NCBI GenBank assembly: GCA_002269645.1
Contig: NIVC01001462.1
Span: forward strand, 222,036-286,035
DNA: 64,000 bases
Source: Macrostomum lignano
Lineage: Eukaryota
Reading direction: 5' to 3'
The notes under the pieces: generated by a model
Database searches by the model: none
The model's input: the letters and a program-made list of their open reading frames with translations, nothing else
What the model was told of the DNA's origin: nothing
Shown here: positions 17,052 to 42,361 of the stretch, piece by piece
How positions within the stretch are numbered: position 1 is the stretch's first letter
Layout: each line of letters opens with the position of its first letter
Made by a program: the position numbers and the translations under genes

Positions 17052-18021
17052 TGTTGTATCCCCCTTCCTCGCTGGCACGGCCGGGTTGGGCGACGGGTAG
17101 CGGTGTCGGGGTTCGGGTACTAGACTGCCCAGGGCTTACGAGCTCGATCGGCGACCCCGAGGCGTACGGACACTTCGGGGGGAGGTCAAGGTTGAGAAGT
17201 CGAGAGAGAGGGGAGGGGCGGCTGTGGGCGGGCGGCCACTCGACAGCCTGGTGAGTCAAGGAAGAGAGAGAGGGCTGCGGGCGGTCGGCCACTCGACAGC
17301 CTGGTGAATCAAGGAAAAGAGAGAGGGCTGTGGGCGGGCGGCCACTCGACAGCCTGGTGAGTCAAGGAAGAGAGAGAGGGCTGCGGGCGGTCGGCCACTT
17401 GACAGCCTGGTGAGTCAGACTGAGGAGAGAGTGAGAGAGAGAGAGATCAGGAGAGTGACCCCAAGGAACACAGGCAATTGTCTCGACAGCTTACCGGGCC
17501 GGGTCGATTATAGCACTCATACACGGGAAGGCCGATCAATTGCAATAAATTGAGTCTTCGCAGTAAGAGACCATCTTTATGGTTGATCGCTGGTCACGTT
17601 CGTTTATTTATCGCAGTGGGCGCAAATGGGCGCAGGCATGGTGAGAAAAGGGGCGGGGTCTGAGCGTCGCCTTAAATAACGAGTAAAAAGGGGCAGGGGC
17701 GCAAACAAGGGGGGGGGGAGAAAGGGCTTAAACAATGGAGCTGATTGACAGCTGATTGGCTGCGGCGAGGGGAGGGTGGAAGCGCGCACGGCCAGGGAGA
17801 GGGAGAGAGAGCAGAGGCCCAGCCAATCAGCACGGCTAGCCAAAGGGCTAAACAGCCAAGGCGAGAGAGAGAGAGAGAGAAAGAGAGCAGAGGCTCAGCC
17901 AAAGGGCTCATAGCTCCAGACTGGCTTGAGCCGGGGGGGGGGTAACAATAATCAACTACCAAAGTCAACAACTATCAAAGTGCACTTGCACCAAGGGAGC
18001 ACTGTGACACAGGTCACAACA
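17052..18021 (-). mobile_element. Solo LTR (970 bp) containing an SL-like sequence
   Basis: TGTTGT...ACAACA termini, 4-bp TSD ATTG (17048-17051 and 18022-18025), GC-rich against AT-rich flanks, internal ~55-bp repeats at 17225-17420. Confidence 0.8.
17541..17582 (-). other. Spliced-leader-like sequence (42 nt)
   Basis: CCATAAAGATGGTCTCTTACTGCGAAGACTCAATTTATTGCA, compared with the M. lignano SL as I recall it (CCGTAAAGACGGTCTCTTACTGCGAAGACTCAATTTATTGCATG): two CpG-type transitions and a broken terminal ATG. Confidence 0.75.
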
Positions 18022-20127: not shown

Positions 20128-23100
20128 ATGTCCTGTCCATCAGCCTACGAATTTATTCGACGCATAGGCAAAGGCGCTTTCGGCAATGCCACACTAATTC
20201 GACGAAAATCAGATGGCTGTCAATGTGTTTTAAAAGAGATTTTGCTTAGCACTCTCAAAGACAAGCGCGAACAGAACTGGGCCCGCCAGGAGGTGCAATT
20301 GTTGCGCTCGTTTGAGCATCCCGGTATCGTTCGCTATTTTGATTCGTTTGTTCTGCCCACCTCACTGTGCATCGTTATGGAGTTTTGCGACGGCGGAGAC
20401 TTGTGCGATCGAATTGACAATCAAAAAATGCCTTTTGCCGAAGAGTTAATAATGGATTGGTTTGCTCAGCTCTGTCTGGCCTTGAAGTATATTCACGATA
20501 GGAGAATTATTCATAGGTATGCGATGCTAATGAATATAAGCGCTCTGTATTTAATGCATAGATACTATCTCTGAAGATATGTATATGCGACACAAAGGAG
20601 AGATTACGTTATTCCATCAGTCCATCGAAGGACCAGAGGGATTGTCAGCAGCCTATCGAAGGACCAGAGGGGGTTGTCAGTGGCCTATCGAAGGACCTGA
20701 GGGGTTGTCAGCAGCCTATCGAAGGACCTGAGGGGGTTGTCAGTGGCCTATCGAAGGACCAGAGGGGGTTGTCAGCAGCCTATCGAAGGACCTGAGGGGT
20801 TGTCAGTGGCCTATCGAAGGACCAGAGGGGGTTGTCAGCAGCCTATCGAAGGACCAGAGGGGGTTGTCAGAAGCCAATCGAAGGACCAGAAGGGGTTGTC
20901 AGAAGCCTATCGAAGGACCTGAGGGTTTGTCAGTGGCCTATCGAAGGACCAGAAGGGGTTGTCAGAAGCCTATCGAAGGACCTGAGGGTTTGTCAGTGGC
21001 CTATCGAAGGACCAGAAGGGGTTGTCAGAAGCCTATCGAAGGACCTGAGGGTTTGTCAGTGGCCTATCGAAGGACCTGAGGGGTTGTCAGTGGCCTGTCG
21101 AAGGACCTGAGGGGTTGTCAGCAGCCTATTGAAGGACCAGAGGGGTTGTCAGAAGCCTATCGAAGGACCAGAAGGGGTTGTCAGAAGCCTATCGAAGGAC
21201 CTGAGGGTTTGTCAGTGGCCTATCGAAGGACCTGAGGGGTTGTCAGTGGCCTATCGAAGGACCAAAAGGGGTTGTCAGTGGCCTATCGAAGGACCTGAGG
21301 GTTTGTCAGTGGCCTATCGAAGGACCTGAGGGGTTGTAAGTGGCCTATCGAAGGACCTGAGGGGTTGTCAGCAGCCTATCAAAGGACCAGAGGGGGTTCC
21401 CAGCGGCCTATCGAAGGACCAGAAGGGGTTGTCAGAAGCCTATCGAAGGACCAGAGGGGGCTGTTAGCAGCCTATCGAAGGACCTGAGGGGTTGTCAGCA
21501 GCCTATCGAAGGACCAGAGGGGGTCGTCATCGGATTTTTTAAGAGTTAGAGACATAAACTTATAGTGTATAACTATTTTACGAGTAAAATGACTATTAAA
21601 GTCAATGATAAACTTAACACTAATCTATCAACAGGGACATCAAACCGAAGAACATATTCCTAATGCGCAATGGAAAAGTTATTAAGCTTGGCGATTTTGG
21701 CGTTGCAAAAACTCTGGATTTTACTCAGCAACTTGCCGTAACAGGCATTGGCACGGCTAATTATTTGAGTCCTGAGATTGTGAAGGGAGAGGCCTACAAT
21801 AACAAGACTGATATCTGGTCCATGGGCTGCGTCCTGTACGAGTTGCTGGCTCTGAGAATTGCATTCTGTGCCAGAAATGTCAAGACGCTCTACATGAATA
21901 TTAAATTGGGAGCATTGTCGCCTTTGCCAACAAGATACAGTGCGGAATTGCGCGCGATCTGCACCGCTATGCTGAGGAAGAATCCCAAGTGAGTGAAATA
22001 CGTTTAAGTTCATTTTTTGCTACTGACAGTAGCATAATTTATTGCTGTCCTTAACTTGTCTCCATTTGTGATGACATACACGCATTTTATATGTAGACTG
22101 TGTGTACAGTTTCTGTACTGCAGGAAAGTCCACGGAAATTCCATGGAGCTCAAAAGACCAACTTAAGCGCCTCTGTGTGTACATGTACATGTACACAGTA
22201 ATTAAACTTGCTCTAAATAACTTTCACTTGTTTTTTCTAATTGCAGAGATCGTCCAGGAGTTGGAGCTCTGCTAAAGAGAGACTGCTTGCGCCCGGCACT
22301 GCTCAAGACAGTGTCCATAGATGTGAGATGGTTATTGGGATTAGTATGAATTTGGGATGTGATTTTTGTGATCAGTATAGATTTGGATTATTGGGATCAA
22401 TATAGGTTTTGGGATTTTTGGGATCAGTACATATTTGGGATTATTGGGGTCAGTATAGATTTGGGATTATTGGGATCATTAGGGTCAGTATTTATTTGGA
22501 ATTATTACGGTCAGTATAAATTTGGGATTATTGGGATCAGTACAGATTTGGGATTTTTGGGATCAGTATAGATTTGGGATTATTGGGATCAGTACAGATT
22601 TGGATTATTGGGATCAGTATGGATTTGGATTATTGGGATCAGTACAGATTTGGATTATTGGGATCAGTATGGATTTGGATTATTGGGATCAGTACGGATT
22701 TGGATTTTTAGGATCAGTACGGATTTGGATTTTTAGGATCAGTACGGATTTGGATTATTGGGATCAGTACAGATTTGGATTATTGGGATCAGTATGGATT
22801 TGGATTATTGGGATCAGTACAGATTTGGATTATTGGGATCAGTATGGATTTGGATTATTGGGATCAGTACAGATTTGGATTATTGGGATCAGTATGGATT
22901 TGGATTATTGGGATCAGTACAGATTTGGATTATTGGGATCAGTATGGATTTGGATTATTGGGATCAGTACGGATTTGGATTTTTAGGATCAGTACGGATT
23001 TGGATTATTGGGATCAGTACGGATTTGGATTTTTAGGATCAGTACGGATTTGGATTATTGGGATCAGTACAGATTTGGACTATTGGGATCAGTATGGATT

Positions 23101-29409: not shown

Positions 29410-30771
29410 ATGAATACAGCTAGAGGCGTTGCCAACAACGAAGAAGAGTCTGATACAGCTTCCTTAGCTTCGTCGGGCTCTTTGACGGATATTACTGGAT
29501 TGACAAATCGACTGCTCGGTCCTTCGGCAACCTATCCTCCTGACGCTGGCATCTACGCTGAATGTCATTTGCTTGCTCCTTCGGTTGCCTGTTTGGCCAC
29601 TGCTAATCAGAAAGCTTGTAGTGACCTTAGGAATGACAGCAATGATGCTAGTAACGATTCCGAAGACGGTAGTGGCTGGTTAGCACCACCTTCATCAGAT
29701 TCTTTGCTATCGTCATCGGAAGCTGTAGCATCGAATTCGGCTTCATCATCAATGCCACCATCGCGACTTGATGGCAAAGCCGCTCGCGAGGCTCTTCAAC
29801 GCTACGTAGCAGATCGGCACGGTGTGCGGGGCCCCGACTGTCTGTGCGGCGCTGGCCGAGCCGCTGCGGCCATGGAATTGCGCGGCCTGCACCACGGCTG
29901 CTCAGTGGCCTATCGTTGCGAACTGCTAGTAGAACGTCGTCGACTTCAATGGCGCTGTTTGCCGTATACTGATGAAGATGGTTCAAAACGTCAAGTAGTG
30001 TTAGACGCGGATGGTGGTGCAGCACGACCGGAATCGCCATGGGATATTGTTGTACCAGGCGGCGAACTTGACGACGAACGGTTGAAGCACTGGCTAGAAG
30101 GCAAAGCTACTGTTGCCGTGCCGGGCACGGAATCGATTCGTTCTTGCGGCTACTGTCGCGGTCGAGGTCGCATTCAATGCAGCGATTGTCGCTCGGGCGG
30201 TAAACCGCCTCAACCTTGTCCAGCTTGCGGTAGCGACAGTAAAAAGAAACCATCGACTGATGACAGCGCTTTCTGTAGTTTCTGCGGCGGTACTACCGGA
30301 TTTTTACGCTGCAGTCGATGCAGCTCGAATGGAACCTACGTCTGTCCATTGTGCGAGGGTCGGCGTCGCTTAGTTTGGCACCTAGAGTTGTACGTCGTTT
30401 GGCAGCGTCGAGGTGAGACTCGCTTAGCCGAAGCTTCAATAGTGATTGACGATCCGCAGTTTCTTGGCTTGCGTTTGAGCCAATTCGGCTCGGAGATTTA
30501 TCGCGACGAGGCGCGTAGGCTGGCTCCGTTGACGCCGGATCGATGCGCCGACGATAGGGCGCGCAGATTCTCGCGCGAATTGCTCCCGGCACTATTGCAG
30601 CATCAATCGGCGCTAGGGCGCGTCTTAGCTATGCGGCATAGTGTGTCAGCGTCTTCGGTTACAGCCGTGGACTGGGAGCTGTCTGGTAGGCGTGGTCGGT
30701 TTTATGTTTATGGCACCGATCGTCGGGTGCACTTTCCCGATTATCCTGGGCGAGTGTGCCAGATTCTCTGA
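29410..30771 (+). CDS. ssuh2: SSUH2 homolog (DnaJ-type CxxCxGxG zinc-finger repeats), intronless, 453 aa
   Basis: Repeated CxxCxGxG motifs, LELYVVW, C-terminal FYVYGTDRRVHFPDYP...CQIL. Confidence 0.8.
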   Translation: MNTARGVANNEEESDTASLASSGSLTDITGLTNRLLGPSATYPPDAGIYAECHLLAPSVACLATANQKACSDLRNDSNDASNDSEDGSGWLAPPSSDSLLSSSEAVASNSASSSMPPSRLDGKAAREALQRYVADRHGVRGPDCLCGAGRAAAAMELRGLHHGCSVAYRCELLVERRRLQWRCLPYTDEDGSKRQVVLDADGGAARPESPWDIVVPGGELDDERLKHWLEGKATVAVPGTESIRSCGYCRGRGRIQCSDCRSGGKPPQPCPACGSDSKKKPSTDDSAFCSFCGGTTGFLRCSRCSSNGTYVCPLCEGRRRLVWHLELYVVWQRRGETRLAEASIVIDDPQFLGLRLSQFGSEIYRDEARRLAPLTPDRCADDRARRFSRELLPALLQHQSALGRVLAMRHSVSASSVTAVDWELSGRRGRFYVYGTDRRVHFPDYPGRVCQIL

Positions 30772-32013
30772 GGCTGTGTCGTTGGCGGAATCTGTTGTCA
30801 AATGTGGAAGATTCAACGCGTTCTACTTTTAAATCCTTTATGCGCGAGCTTCGAATAGCTTCTATAATCTTATAGAATTCGACCTGCCGCTAAATTTCTT
30901 TTGGTCTACGGCCAACAGTCAAAAATATTTATTTAACAGCTCATTAAGAACCGCCACCTCCCATAAGCTGTTGCTACTTCTGGCAATTCCGTCATAAAAT
31001 CCTTAACAAAGACAGACAGACCTTTTAGGCATATTGTACTAACCTGCATTGTGCCAGTCTAATCATAATTTTGTTTGTTTGTTTTAACGTTGTGTTATCT
31101 ACTCTCCTGCTTATGATTTCATCAGTTTTATTAAGGTTAACTGCCTCCTTTGGCAGTATTGGCTTGTCCTTTCTACCTGCTTGATATCATATTTCTAGGT
31201 TTATGTTTCAGTCACATGTTGAGTAAATATATATACTGAAATCGTTATCGAGCTACACTGTCTATTGGGTACATTATCTGCCTATTTGTTTCTTTTTTGG
31301 CTTCCTTTTGAGCTCGATTTTATGTCAAATACTTTGACGTTTTATATGGCTACTAGAGTACGATTTAGCAGCCTTAAATTTGTCCCGATTACTAAATATA
31401 CTCTGGAGGATTGTGTTGTTAGCTCTGTCTCCCAGGTGGAGTGAATGGAATTGGCAGATATTTCTGTCTTTTACGAGCTAGCTCCATTTTCCAGTGTGGG
31501 TAAAAGCTTTTTTTGTACTTTAACGAACGATTGACACCAGTATCTTCTAGACAAAATTTCTTGCTGCTTTCGCAGACAATTTCTGCTTCTTGCAAAATCG
31601 ATTCGTTCATTCGTTGGTAACAGTTTTTCTAGCAGCACATTCTTTTATCTTTTCTATTGCTGATTTAGTAATTGCTCGTAAATAATTATGTTATTGAAAT
31701 GGTTGACCCCATTATGGGAAATTTGCTTCTTCTATTTAGGAAGCCAAAAATCCAAAATGTGACGGAATCTAATTGAATCGTAATAAAGATCTATCCTATG
31801 TGTGCTATCCTCCTGTAGAATTGGGGAAATTTAGTAAACACAGTATGTTTCTCGTCAGTTTCTACAACTGCTTAATCTCAACCTATCTGATGCCTTTTTA
31901 TCTCGGTCTGTCCATTTTAAACTAACTGACGGTTATCCATCCACATCAATTTATAAACACCTCATTTCAATTTCCAACACCTTAAAAACCCAGCCCTACA
32001 CCAAAACTTGCAG

Positions 32014-32682
32014 CCGTCACCAAACCTTACAAAGTTCACCTTAGAAGAAGCGCTCCAGCTTCTCCCAATTCACTCTTCGCAACAAGCCGCGGTGTGCGGG
32101 TTCACCGGTACAGTGGTCTATTATCACTACGGATGCGATGGCTTGAACGACGCGGGCTGGGGCTGCGGCTATCGGGCCTGTCAAACTCAGCTGCACTGGC
32201 TGTTGAGCAATTCGAAACTTCAGCATCCCGATCCGGAAGTGCCGGCCATACCCGCAATGCAATCGGCTTTAGTTGCTATGGGCGATAAGCCGCCTAGTTT
32301 TACTGGATCTCGCGAATGGATCGGCTGTCTGGAAGCCGCCTACCTTGCAGATAAATTCGCTAATCGAAGGTGTCGGATATTGCATCAGAATAGTCAATCG
32401 AGCGAAGTCAATGTCGATGTGAAATCGTTGAAGAAACACTTTGAGGATGTCGGCTGTCCAGTGATGATGGGCGGTCATACTGACGCGTCTGCTAAGACTG
32501 TTCTGGCTGTGTCAGGTTCCGATACGGATCTGTTGCTGTTGGATCCTCACTATGGCCGAGTGGTCAATAGTCCTCCGTTAAGTCTTAGTGGCTTAGTTCA
32601 CGAAGGCTGGCTCTCGTGGCGTAGTGTTGATTCTTTAACTGAGACCGCGTTTTACAATATGTGTCTGCCTTTAACTGATTGA
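32014..32682 (+). CDS. ufsp1: Ufm1-specific protease 1 (peptidase C78); start codon not in this exon
   Basis: YYHY...DAGWGCGYR (catalytic Cys), MGDKPPSFTGSREWIG, LLDPHY (Asp-His), FYNMCLP. An AG acceptor ends at 32013; no in-frame ATG between the stop at 31954 and the catalytic Cys. Confidence 0.85.
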   Translation, partial: PSPNLTKFTLEEALQLLPIHSSQQAAVCGFTGTVVYYHYGCDGLNDAGWGCGYRACQTQLHWLLSNSKLQHPDPEVPAIPAMQSALVAMGDKPPSFTGSREWIGCLEAAYLADKFANRRCRILHQNSQSSEVNVDVKSLKKHFEDVGCPVMMGGHTDASAKTVLAVSGSDTDLLLLDPHYGRVVNSPPLSLSGLVHEGWLSWRSVDSLTETAFYNMCLPLTD

Positions 32683-32789
32683 TTTGCTGTCAGGTTTGAA
32701 GTCTAGTGAAATGTTTAAATCTGGAGCAAGGTTATAATAAGGGTTGCTTAAGCCAGTAGTTTGTGAACTGCGAAGTCCTGTGTGGAAAG

Positions 32790-33300
32790 CTTGTCAAAAT
32801 ACTTAGTGAACTTTGTCAGAAGACTTGTGAAGATTGACAGAAGACTTTGTGAAGATTGGCAGAAGATTTTGTGAAGATTGCCAGAAGACTTTGTGAAGCT
32901 TGGCTAAAGACTTTGTGAAGATTGCCAGAAGATTTTGTGAAGATTGCCAGAAGACTTTGTGAAGATTGATAGAAGACTTTGGGAAGATTGCCAGAAACCT
33001 TTGTGAAGATTGCTAGAAGACTTTGTGAATCTTGGCAGAACACTTTGTGAAGATTGACACAAGACTTTGTGAAGATTGGCAGAAAACTTTGTGAAGATTG
33101 CCAGAAGATTTTGTGAAGATGGACAGAAGACTTTGTGAAGATTGACAGAAGACTTTGTGAAGATTGCCAGAAGATTTTGTGAAGACTGGCAAAAGACTTT
33201 GTGAAGATTGCCAGAAGATTTTGTGAAGATTGACAGAAGACTTTGTGAAGATTGCCAGAAGATTTTGTGAAGATTGCCAGAAAACTTTGTGAAGCTTGAA
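32790..33300. repeat. 22-bp minisatellite
   Basis: Unit CTTTGTGAAGATTGCCAGAAGA. Confidence 0.95.
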
Positions 33301-34099
33301 ACTTGTGTGATCTTGAAACTTATCTGCTTGAATATAGTTCGGAATTCCCTTCTAGACTGTTCCGTGATTAACTTGCATTCCAGAATTTTAAAGCAACAAA
33401 GCTTTAGAAATCGTAGATTATAGGCTAATTCTAATCTGCAGATAAGTCGTAGAGAACGCTAGCATTGATAAGCACCCCGTGTTTAACTTGCTGCCTTATT
33501 GAGTGTAGCTACTGTTGTCTCTTTAATTCTTGTCAGTTGGATTTTGAGTTGTACGGCTTTCAGATTTGCGGTGCTTTTAAAAATTTCTGCTATACCCTTT
33601 TATTGGTGAAGGATTATTGAGATTTTGCGGATTATTAATTTTAATATAACTCAAAATCTGAAAACCGTCATTGAATTAATAAATATAGCTTTCTGACTGA
33701 CATTTTACTTTTATCTAATATAAAATCAACTATCTATAAGACTAAAGCGATGTAATACAATGTGAATATCCTTTATTTTCGTGTGTAAACACGTGTGTAA
33801 CTAAGTGTACATATTTGCTCTGCAGCTGTGGCAAGATAGGCTGAAAAATAGATAGGCCATTCTTTCCTGTGTAGAGATCGATGTTTGCTCTTCTTTTGTA
33901 TTCTCTGTATCCCTTTGTAAATCTTTCTCCCATAGTATACCTTTTCTTGCATTAATCGATTATAGCCATCAGTTAATCTATACTCTCTTCTCTCCATAAT
34001 TTACCTTCATCTTACCTGGGCTACCAGTTTCTTTGCCTAGTTTATCCTATTTTCACTTGCATTCCCTTCATTTAACTTAATCAGAGAGAAGTTAAACCC

Positions 34100-34360
34100 C
34101 GGTTCTACCCATCTTTACCTCTGCTCTACCCATCTTTACCTCTGCTCTACCCATCCTTTACCCCTGCTCTACCCATCCTTTACCCCTGCTCTACCCATCC
34201 TTACCCCTGCTCTACCCATCCTTTACCTCTGTTCTACCCATTCTTACCTCTGCTCTACCCATCCTTACCCCTGCTCTACCCATTCTTACCCCTGCTCTAC
34301 CCATTCTTACCCCTGTTCTTCCCTCCTTTACCCCTGCTCTACCCTCCTGCGCCCTTAACC
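34100..34360. repeat. 21-22-bp minisatellite
   Basis: Unit TCTACCCATCCTTACCCCTGC. Confidence 0.9.
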
Positions 34361-39003: not shown

Positions 39004-41536
<2,533 letters not shown>

Positions 41537-42189: not shown

Positions 42190-42261
42190 TTCCCTGACCG
42201 GGAGTCGAACCCGGGCCGCCTGGGTGAGAGCCAGGAATCCTAACCGCTAGACCATCAGGGA
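42190..42261 (-). tRNA. tRNA-Glu (anticodon CTC)
   Basis: TCCCTGATGGTCTAGCGGTTAGGATTCCTGGCT-CTC-ACCCAGGCGGCCCGGGTTCGACTCCCGGTCAGGGAA: canonical cloverleaf followed by a TTTT terminator. Confidence 0.95.
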
Positions 42262-42361
42262 CTTGTTGACATGTGGCATTTCTTGTGAATTTATTCACCA
42301 TGCAACCGAAAACGCTATTGCATGACTCGAGCTTTGGCCACACTCCGCAGACCACACAGAA

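What the first reader, a model, noticed from the sequence alone, without database searches (positions are those of the whole stretch)
31954..32682. UFSP1 has no genomic start codon; the spliced leader's terminal AUG would supply it in frame
Seen: no ATG between the in-frame TAA at 31954 and the catalytic Cys, and a TTGCAG acceptor ending at 32013 in phase 0. Established: flatworm SLs end in AUG, which can serve as the initiator Met (shown in Schistosoma). SL-AUG + CCG TCA CCA gives MPSPNL..., a 223-aa full-length protease. Human UFSP1 also lacks an AUG upstream of its catalytic Cys and starts at a CUG; the downstream MGDKP Met that was once annotated as its start is present here too. This would be a convergent non-standard initiation of the same gene.
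Basis: partly seen in the sequence, partly recalled or inferred. Interest (0 to 1): 0.7.

Follow-up and report, generated by a model that had tools for sequence, protein, structure and literature searches.

The report
Flatworm UFSP1 borrows spliced-leader start codon
A Macrostomum lignano UFM1 protease gene has no start codon of its own and almost certainly gets its AUG from the trans-spliced leader, which is a well-known flatworm mechanism and so an ordinary case.

Summary
The window is Macrostomum lignano (assembly Mlig_3_7). Bases 32014-32682 (+) form a single-exon UFSP1 gene (peptidase C78) with its catalytic Cys, Asp and His intact. There is no in-frame ATG between the TAA at 31954 and codon 82 (32257), which lies 31 codons past the catalytic Cys.

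A TTGCAG acceptor ends at 32013 in phase 0. It fits the published M. lignano trans-splice motif [T/C]TNCAG. The published 35-nt spliced leader (SL) ends in ATG. SL-ATG plus 32014 onward gives a 223-aa protein whose N-terminus lines up with the Met of vertebrate UFSP1s.

The GenBank coding sequence is 5'-partial and begins exactly at 32014. That annotation pipeline cuts transcripts at peaks of SL-containing reads and trims off the SL. This is strong but indirect evidence. I could not reach SL-joined reads or transcripts.

The mechanism has been established in flatworms since 2006. A second gene 7 kb away (KTI12-like, 39037) shows the same pattern. The parallel with human UFSP1's CUG start is real but looks coincidental. 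My verdict is an ordinary new instance of a known mechanism, of low to moderate interest.

The parts
31954..31956 (+). In-frame TAA that closes the UFSP1 reading frame upstream
   Evidence: Translation of 31954-32682; bases checked.
31699..32013 (+). Proximal part of the presumed outron, removed by trans-splicing. It carries six ATGs (31699, 31714, 31757, 31798, 31845, 31890). Searches show that the ORFs from 31699 and 31714 run at least 20 codons and those from the other four run 1-26 codons. None reaches the UFSP1 frame.
   Evidence: ATG scans. Upstream extent unknown; the previous annotated CDS ends at 30771.
31819..31842 (+). It has no ATG and is open in phase 0. It is not part of the deposited gene model.
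   Evidence: SL-ATG + this exon + 32014 onward would also read in frame (MNWGNLVNTPSPNL), but nothing supports its use.
32008..32013 (+). TTGCAG trans-splice acceptor. It fits the M. lignano motif [T/C]TNCAG and also contains the only in-frame near-cognate codon (TTG) upstream of 32014.
   Evidence: motif from PMC8629364; identical in the paralogous locus L002.
32014..32682 (+). Single-exon UFSP1 coding sequence (222 codons plus TGA). With the SL's AUG it gives a 223-aa protein, MPSPNL...LPLTD.
   Evidence: The deposited CDS (P0015) spans exactly these bases. Pfam C78, PDB 2z84, orthologue alignment.
32164..32166 (+). Catalytic Cys codon (Cys52 in SL-Met numbering) in GWGCGYR
   Evidence: invariant column C52.
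32133..32140 (+). Two out-of-frame ATGs (32133, 32138) that a scanning ribosome would meet before any in-frame genomic ATG. The ORF from 32133 is 51 codons and runs past both in-frame ATGs.
32257..32280 (+). First in-frame genomic ATG (32257, MQSALVA) and the conserved MGDKP Met (32278). Starting at either gives a protein without the catalytic Cys. An older 141-aa database entry (P0016) starts at the equivalent of the first one.
32542..32550 (+). Asp-Pro-His catalytic box (Asp178, His180)
   Evidence: Invariant columns D178, P179, H180; codons read.

Best explanation
The UFSP1 pre-mRNA of Macrostomum lignano is trans-spliced at the TTGCAG acceptor ending at 32013. The 35-nt spliced leader (SL), CGGTCTCTTACTGCGAAGACTCAATTTATTGCATG, is joined directly to base 32014. 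The leader's last three bases, AUG, become codon 1 of a 223-aa active UFM1-specific protease 1 (MPSPNLTKF...).

The gene therefore depends on trans-splicing for its initiator codon. Trans-splicing also removes an upstream region loaded with ATGs and an in-frame stop.

Shown here:
- The gene's identity and intact catalytic residues.
- The lack of any genomic in-frame ATG upstream of the catalytic Cys.
- The phase-0 acceptor that fits the species' motif.
- An annotated CDS that begins at exactly 32014.

Inferred:
- That SL-containing reads actually join at 32014.
- That ribosomes start at the SL AUG.
For: - **Organism.** The window is M. lignano Mlig_3_7 contig NIVC01001462.1.
- **SL sequence.** The SL ends in ATG (PMC8629364). 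Wiberg et al. call it a 'translation start codon' (PMC10468722).
- **Acceptor motif.** The top motif at 21,754 M. lignano trans-splice sites is [T/C]TNCAG placed at the junction. TTGCAG|CCG fits it.
- **Annotated CDS start.** The deposited 5'-partial CDS (P0015, 222 aa, starting PSPNL) begins at 32014, the first base after the AG.
- **How that start arises.** The annotation pipeline (TBONE plus TransDecoder) cuts transcripts at peaks of SL-containing reads after trimming the SL (PMC5730564). With the in-frame TAA at 31954, an ATG-less CDS starting at 32014 is possible only if the transcript model begins there.
- **Frame.** SL-AUG is in frame, with no stop, and gives 223 aa.
- **Length match.** The N-terminus aligns within 2-10 residues of the Met of fish and reptile UFSP1s of 207-227 aa. 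Mouse UfSP1 aligns from its residue 14.
- **Downstream ATGs are poor alternatives.** Two out-of-frame ATGs precede the first in-frame ATG, and that ATG would delete the catalytic Cys.
- **No cis-exon candidate.** No ATG-bearing in-phase exon with the GT[G/A]AG donor exists between 30772 and 32013.
- **Precedent.** The SL AUG is a proven initiator in Schistosoma. It is in frame in 28% of trans-spliced mRNAs and required by more than 40 cDNAs (Cheng et al. 2006, as summarised in PMC9851317 and PMC12582326).
- **Second case nearby.** A KTI12-like gene in the same window has an annotated CDS starting right after a CAG at 39037 without an ATG.
- **Transcriptional unit.** The paralogue's locus tag ends in g2, which I read as the second gene cut from a transcriptional unit. 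This is an inference from the naming.
Against: - I saw no SL-joined read, EST or transcript. Exact look-ups of M+protein and of SL-readthrough variants in the 15-billion-protein collection found nothing. No paper or supplement mentions this gene.
- In the nearly identical paralogous locus, the annotated CDS starts 18 nt downstream of the same acceptor and not after an AG. The paralogous KTI12 CDS starts 3 nt after its CAG. Annotated 5' ends are therefore not always exact trans-splice sites.
- The stretch before the acceptor is only 55% pyrimidine.
- The SL AUG has a poor Kozak context (U at -3), read from the SL sequence itself.
- Two other AGs in phase 0 (exon starts 32035 and 32059) could serve as alternative acceptors.
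Confidence: 0.8

Rival explanations
1. The SL AUG is still the initiator, but the 5' structure differs. Either the SL is spliced at another phase-0 AG (exon start 32035 or 32059), or it is spliced at 31819 and the 24-nt mini-exon 31819-31842 is then cis-spliced to 32014. The N-termini would be slightly shorter or longer (MFTLEE..., MLLPIH..., or MNWGNLVNTPSPNL...).
For: All three alternatives read in frame without a stop. CTCCAG|CTT at 32059 also fits YTNCAG. The mini-exon has a good pyrimidine-rich acceptor and a GTATGT donor. The paralogue's CDS is annotated from a point 18 nt downstream.
Against: The deposited model for this copy is a single exon starting at 32014. ACAAAG at 32035 does not fit the motif. 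A start at 32059 would remove 15 residues, although those residues lie upstream of where homology to mouse UfSP1 begins. The paralogue's start (equivalent to 32032) does not coincide with any AG.
Confidence: 0.07
2. The mRNA is not trans-spliced, or a fraction of it is not. Translation then starts at the near-cognate TTG at 32008 (MQPSPNL...), analogous to the CUG start of human UFSP1.
For: TTG at 32008 is the only in-frame near-cognate codon between the TAA and 32014, and it has an A at -3. Human UFSP1 shows that near-cognate initiation can produce this enzyme.
Against: UUG is a weak initiator (general knowledge). An unspliced leader would carry six upstream ATGs within about 315 nt. The TTG sits inside a consensus acceptor that trans-splicing removes. 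The annotated transcript starts downstream of it, at 32014.
Confidence: 0.05
3. An upstream exon carrying an ATG is cis-spliced to the acceptor at 32013, giving a conventional start and an N-terminal extension.
For: A few in-phase ATG...|GT segments exist. The best is 31322 or 31346 to 31435, with the junction CAG|GTGGAG.
Against: None has the species' consensus donor GT[G/A]AG. The 30-38 added residues have no counterpart in orthologues, which already match the SL-Met length. The RNA-seq-based model has no such exon. The mini-exon 31819-31842 has no ATG.
Confidence: 0.05
4. Translation starts at the first genomic in-frame ATG (32257 or 32278). The product is a truncated protein without the catalytic Cys, or the gene is decaying.
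For: A 141-aa database entry (P0016) starts at the equivalent of 32257. Human UFSP1 was long annotated this way.
Against: The 81 codons upstream are open and strongly conserved, including the YYHYGCDG and GWGCGYR boxes. Both genomic copies are intact. Two out-of-frame ATGs precede 32257. The equivalent human annotation proved wrong.
Confidence: 0.03

Closest known systems
Schistosoma mansoni mRNAs that take their initiator Met from the spliced leader's 3'-terminal AUG (Cheng, Cohen, Ndegwa & Davis 2006, J Biol Chem 281:733)
   Same: It is a flatworm SL ending in ...UUGCAUG. The AUG is joined in frame to an ORF that lacks its own upstream AUG, so trans-splicing is required for correct initiation. 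More than 40 cDNAs were reported as dependent on it.
   Different: The species differs (a free-living macrostomid) and so does the gene. Here translation from the SL AUG is inferred, not shown experimentally.
Human UFSP1 initiated at the near-cognate 217CUG (Liang et al. 2022, PMC9168615; Millrine et al. 2022, PMC9638016)
   Same: It is the same enzyme. No AUG lies upstream of the catalytic Cys. The conserved MGDKP Met downstream was mistaken for the start, which led to the label 'inactive'.
   Different: The mechanism is unrelated. The human case uses eIF2A-dependent CUG initiation on a conventional mRNA. The flatworm case uses a normal AUG delivered by trans-splicing. Mouse, fish and reptile UFSP1s have ordinary ATG starts, so the two cases are independent and probably coincidental.
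slORFs: ORFs created by SL addition in nematodes, Oikopleura and trypanosomes (slORFfinder, PMC9851317)
   Same: The SL supplies the start codon, and annotation pipelines that trim the SL miss the true start.
   Different: Those SLs mostly supply near-cognate NUG codons and often create alternative ORFs. Here a canonical AUG starts the main conserved ORF.
KTI12-like gene in the same window (CDS from 39037)
   Same: The annotated 5'-partial CDS starts directly after a CAG, and the SL AUG would be in frame. It would give [17 protein letters not shown], with the P-loop strand beginning at residue 5.
   Different: It has an in-frame genomic ATG 11 codons upstream in the presumed outron. It is therefore not strictly dependent on the SL AUG, whereas UFSP1 is.

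Membership tests
UFM1-specific protease 1 (peptidase family C78, UFSP1 type) | Significant match to the Peptidase_C78 profile, above the curated threshold | tested here: met
   PF07910 at 151.5 bits against a cut-off of 29.1, E = 2.9e-44, covering profile positions 6-200 of 200.
UFM1-specific protease 1 (peptidase family C78, UFSP1 type) | Catalytic Cys box (GWGCGYR), Asp-Pro-His box and the conserved Tyr of YHY are present | tested here: met
   Invariant columns Y37/H39/Y40, C52 and D178-P179-H180 in the alignment with nine UFSP1s. Aligned to the mouse UfSP1 structure 2z84.
UFM1-specific protease 1 (peptidase family C78, UFSP1 type) | A short, single-domain protein of about 210-230 aa without the N-terminal domain of UFSP2 | tested here: met
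   The length is 223 aa with the SL Met. The best PDB hit is UfSP1 (218 aa), ahead of UFSP2 (481 aa, matched only in its C-terminal half). Orthologues are 207-227 aa.
UFM1-specific protease 1 (peptidase family C78, UFSP1 type) | Cleaves pro-UFM1 or UFM1 conjugates | not testable with these tools
   This needs an enzyme assay.
Flatworm mRNAs initiated at the spliced-leader AUG (Cheng et al. 2006 class) | The organism's SL ends in AUG | tested here: met
   The M. lignano SL, CGGTCTCTTACTGCGAAGACTCAATTTATTGCATG, is quoted in PMC8629364. Its only ATG is at positions 33-35.
Flatworm mRNAs initiated at the spliced-leader AUG (Cheng et al. 2006 class) | The mRNA is SL trans-spliced at the proposed acceptor | tested here: inconclusive
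   The acceptor fits [T/C]TNCAG. The RNA-seq-based deposited CDS starts at the first base after the AG. No SL-joined read or transcript could be retrieved, and the paralogue's annotated start is offset by 18 nt.
Flatworm mRNAs initiated at the spliced-leader AUG (Cheng et al. 2006 class) | The SL AUG is in frame with the main ORF with no intervening stop | tested here: met
   SL + 32014 onward translates to MPSPNL..., 223 aa, ending at the TGA.
Flatworm mRNAs initiated at the spliced-leader AUG (Cheng et al. 2006 class) | No genomic in-frame AUG can give the full conserved protein, so the gene depends on the SL AUG | tested here: met
   No in-frame ATG lies between the TAA at 31954 and 32257, which is 31 codons past the catalytic Cys. 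No consensus-donor ATG exon lies upstream.
Flatworm mRNAs initiated at the spliced-leader AUG (Cheng et al. 2006 class) | Ribosomes actually initiate at the SL AUG | not testable with these tools
   This needs ribosome profiling, N-terminal proteomics or a reporter assay.

The most novel reading that the evidence does not exclude
UFSP1 may be a gene whose expression is repeatedly placed under non-standard initiation control: a CUG start in humans, and obligate dependence on the SL AUG in Macrostomum. In that reading, the loss of the genomic ATG is selected, for example to tie UFM1 maturation to trans-splicing or TMG-cap-dependent translation, or to keep protease levels low. It would not be a neutral by-product of having an AUG-ending leader.
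Probability: 0.07. Interest if true: 0.5.

Novelty: new member of a known kind. Interest (0 to 1): 0.25.

Why it matters
For biology this is a clean, gene-level example of obligate dependence on spliced-leader trans-splicing for a start codon. It comes from a free-living model flatworm and adds to the cases from Schistosoma.

For annotation it is a reminder of two errors. M. lignano CDSs deposited as '5'-partial' that begin right after a CAG are probably complete once the trimmed SL ATG is restored. Pipelines that pick the first genomic ATG, as in the 141-aa entry, produce a falsely 'inactive' UFSP1, which is the same mistake made for the human gene.

It does not open a new mechanism or a new question.

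Tried and rejected
- **Direct transcript evidence.** I ran exact look-ups of M+UFSP1, of SL-readthrough forms (SYCEDSIYCM...) for both genomic copies, and of the 141-aa form in the 15-billion-protein collection. All were absent. The 90% cluster holds only the two genomic models and one older entry.
- **Literature and supplements.** I found no mention of Mlig009352 or UFSP1 in Macrostomum papers or in the supplements held. No paper links UFSP1 with a spliced leader. Cheng et al. 2006 is not held in the library, so its numbers are cited second-hand.
- **Extending the annotation survey.** I tried to cover the rest of the window by looking up two single-exon ORFs. Neither is on record.
- **Using the paralogue for constraint.** The paralogous locus is 97-99% identical both upstream and in the CDS. 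It has seven substitutions, of which five are non-synonymous, affecting four codons. This is too similar to say anything about selection.
- **UFM1-pathway clustering.** I checked whether the downstream ThiF-family gene is UBA5. Its N-terminus (EAELYDRQIRLWGL...) looks to me like the SUMO E1 subunit SAE1, judged from memory of that family, so I rejected the idea.
- **An SL RNA gene in the window.** Only a 3-mismatch SL-like copy without the donor site is present, and Rfam finds only a tRNA.
- **Wider protein searches.** I did not run the exhaustive protein-representative search or a structure prediction. Neither would bear on where translation starts.

Full report
**What is there.** The window is from the flatworm Macrostomum lignano, assembly Mlig_3_7 (GCA_002269645.1), contig NIVC01001462.1. 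Window base 32014 is contig base 254049.

The + strand frame from 31957 to 32682 is open. Its product is a UFM1-specific protease 1:
- Pfam Peptidase_C78 scores 151.5 bits, E = 2.9e-44, covering nearly the whole profile.
- The best solved structure is mouse UfSP1 (2z84, E = 4.9e-44), ahead of UFSP2.
- In an alignment with eight vertebrate and invertebrate UFSP1s, the Tyr/His box, the catalytic Cys (GWGCGYR) and the Asp-Pro-His box are invariant.

**The observation.**
- The in-frame TAA is at 31954-31956.
- The first in-frame ATG is at 32257. The conserved MGDKP Met is at 32278.
- The catalytic Cys codon is at 32164, so both Mets lie downstream of the active-site Cys.
- TTGCAG occupies 32008-32013, and base 32014 begins a codon.
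- Only 35 codons separate the stop from the point where homology to mouse UfSP1 begins. They contain no ATG and only two in-frame near-cognate codons, TTG at 32008 and AAG at 32032.
- A ribosome scanning from 32014 would meet two out-of-frame ATGs (32133, 32138) before any in-frame one.

**What the species is known to do.** M. lignano adds one 35-nt spliced leader (SL), CGGTCTCTTACTGCGAAGACTCAATTTATTGCATG, to 21-39% of its genes.
- The top motif at 21,754 trans-splice acceptors is [T/C]TNCAG, located at the junction (PMC8629364; PMC5730564).
- The terminal ATG is recognised as a potential translation start in Macrostomum (PMC10468722).
- It is a general feature of flatworm SLs (PMC12582326).
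- Cheng et al. 2006 showed in Schistosoma mansoni that this AUG can serve as the initiator Met. [quoted passage not shown] I could not read the 2006 paper itself.

**Evidence that this locus uses it.**

(a) TTGCAG|CCG fits the motif. The motif's density on this strand is 0.0025 per nt, so about 0.09 in-phase sites are expected by chance in the 35 available codon boundaries.

(b) SL-AUG joined to 32014 reads MPSPNLTKF... through to the TGA, 223 aa. This N-terminus aligns within 2-10 residues of the initiator Met of UFSP1s that are 207-227 aa long.

(c) The strongest point is the deposited protein for this gene (P0015). It is 222 aa, starts with PSPNL, and spans exactly 32014-32682. It is a 5'-partial CDS whose first base is the first base after the AG.
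- The annotation was built from RNA-seq. SL sequences were trimmed from reads and transcripts, and transcriptional units were cut at peaks of SL-containing reads by the TBONE pipeline. ORFs were then called by TransDecoder.
- Because an in-frame TAA lies 57 nt upstream, an ATG-less ORF starting at 32014 can be called only if the transcript model itself begins there.
- A transcript end falling by accident on the base after a consensus acceptor is unlikely.

(d) No ATG-bearing, in-phase exon with the species' consensus donor GT[G/A]AG exists in the 1.24 kb back to the previous gene's stop. The best alternative (31322 or 31346 to 31435, CAG|GTGGAG) would add 30-38 residues with no counterpart in orthologues.

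It has no ATG, so it cannot by itself rescue a cis-splicing model.

(f) The 315 nt upstream of the acceptor hold six ATGs, none reaching the UFSP1 frame, plus the in-frame stop. This is the kind of leader that trans-splicing discards.

**How ordinary it is.** Within the same 20 kb, all six annotated genes are on the + strand. A second gene, KTI12-like, has an annotated CDS that starts directly after a CAG at 39037 with ACG ACG GCC.
- The SL AUG would give [17 protein letters not shown], with the P-loop strand beginning at residue 5.
- Unlike UFSP1, that gene also has an in-frame genomic ATG 11 codons upstream.
- The paralogous UFSP1 is tagged Mlig009352g2. I read this as the second gene of a transcriptional unit, an inference from the naming scheme.

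The phenomenon is thus routine for this genome. The 'partial' flags are an artefact of trimming the SL together with its ATG.

**Weak points.**
- I could not obtain a single SL-joined read or transcript. Exact look-ups of the predicted full-length protein and of SL-readthrough versions found nothing. No paper or held supplement names this gene.
- The paralogous locus (L002) is 97-99% identical and has the same TTGCAG. Its CDS is annotated from 18 nt further downstream, not after an AG. Its KTI12 CDS starts 3 nt after the CAG. Annotated 5' ends are therefore not uniformly exact, and I have no explanation for these offsets.
- Two further phase-0 AGs (exon starts 32035 and 32059) could be alternative acceptors.
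- The two copies are too similar to measure constraint.

**Comparison with human UFSP1.** Human UFSP1 initiates at 217CUG, and the annotated 445AUG lies 32 codons after the Cys codon. That matches the MGDKP Met here once a 6-residue insertion is allowed for.

An older 141-aa database entry for the flatworm gene starts at the first genomic ATG and so repeats the human mis-annotation. But the mechanisms are unrelated, and mouse, fish and reptile UFSP1s have normal ATG starts. Use of the SL AUG is also generic in flatworms. I read the parallel as coincidence, not as meaningful convergence.

**Verdict.** My confidence is about 0.8 for the exact model, and about 0.87 that the SL AUG is the initiator in some 5' configuration. 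It is a new instance of a mechanism known since 2006. It is useful mainly as an annotation lesson and is of low to moderate interest.

Noticed in passing
window 17539-17573 (- strand): A 35-nt copy of the M. lignano spliced leader with 3 mismatches (TGGTCTCTTACTGCGAAGACTCAATTTATTGCAAT), where none is expected by chance. It ends in AAT rather than ATG. It is followed by TGATCGG..., not by the GTAAG donor of the genuine SL RNA gene. A GGTAAG lies about 50 nt further on. It could be a retro-copied 5' end of a trans-spliced mRNA or a degenerate SL RNA gene. PMC8629364 describes another genomic SL copy at the 5' end of a protein-coding gene.
   Followed up: partly
window 39037 onward (+), KTI12-like gene: The annotated 5'-partial CDS starts directly after gccagCAG with no ATG. 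The SL AUG would be in frame, giving [17 protein letters not shown]. An in-frame genomic ATG lies 11 codons upstream, at 39004, in the presumed outron. This is a second case in the same window where the SL AUG would be in frame.
   Followed up: partly
L002:10001 and L002:17387 (paralogous contig NIVC01000621.1): In the 94-99% identical duplicate locus, the UFSP1 CDS is annotated from 18 nt downstream of the same TTGCAG, and the KTI12 CDS from 3 nt downstream of its CAG. Neither start is at an AG boundary. The cause is unknown; multi-mapping of reads between the copies is one possibility.
   Followed up: partly
window 32787-33298 and 34096-34348: There are two tandem arrays between UFSP1 and the next gene. 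One has a 22-nt unit repeated 23 times (AAGATTGCCAGAAGACTTTGTG, 85% matches), beginning about 105 nt after the UFSP1 stop. The other has a 21-nt unit repeated 12 times. The copy number differs in the paralogous locus.
   Followed up: partly
window 42190-42261 (-) and 42316-42324 (+): A tRNA gene (Rfam, 60.5 bits) sits about 80 nt upstream of the annotated 5'-partial CDS of a zinc-type alcohol dehydrogenase/quinone oxidoreductase-like gene (42341). Between them lies TATTGCATG, a 9-nt match to the 3' end of the SL. About 0.5 such matches are expected per window, so it is probably chance.
   Followed up: no
window 22014-42682 (+): All six annotated genes in this 20-kb stretch are on the + strand: a 1005-aa repeat-rich protein, a 453-aa ORF with no Pfam hit, UFSP1, an SAE1-like ThiF protein, a KTI12-like protein and the dehydrogenase-like gene. 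This fits the polycistronic transcriptional units described for this species. The 453-aa ORF (29410-30771) is disrupted by a 443-nt indel in the paralogous locus and is not annotated there.
   Followed up: partly
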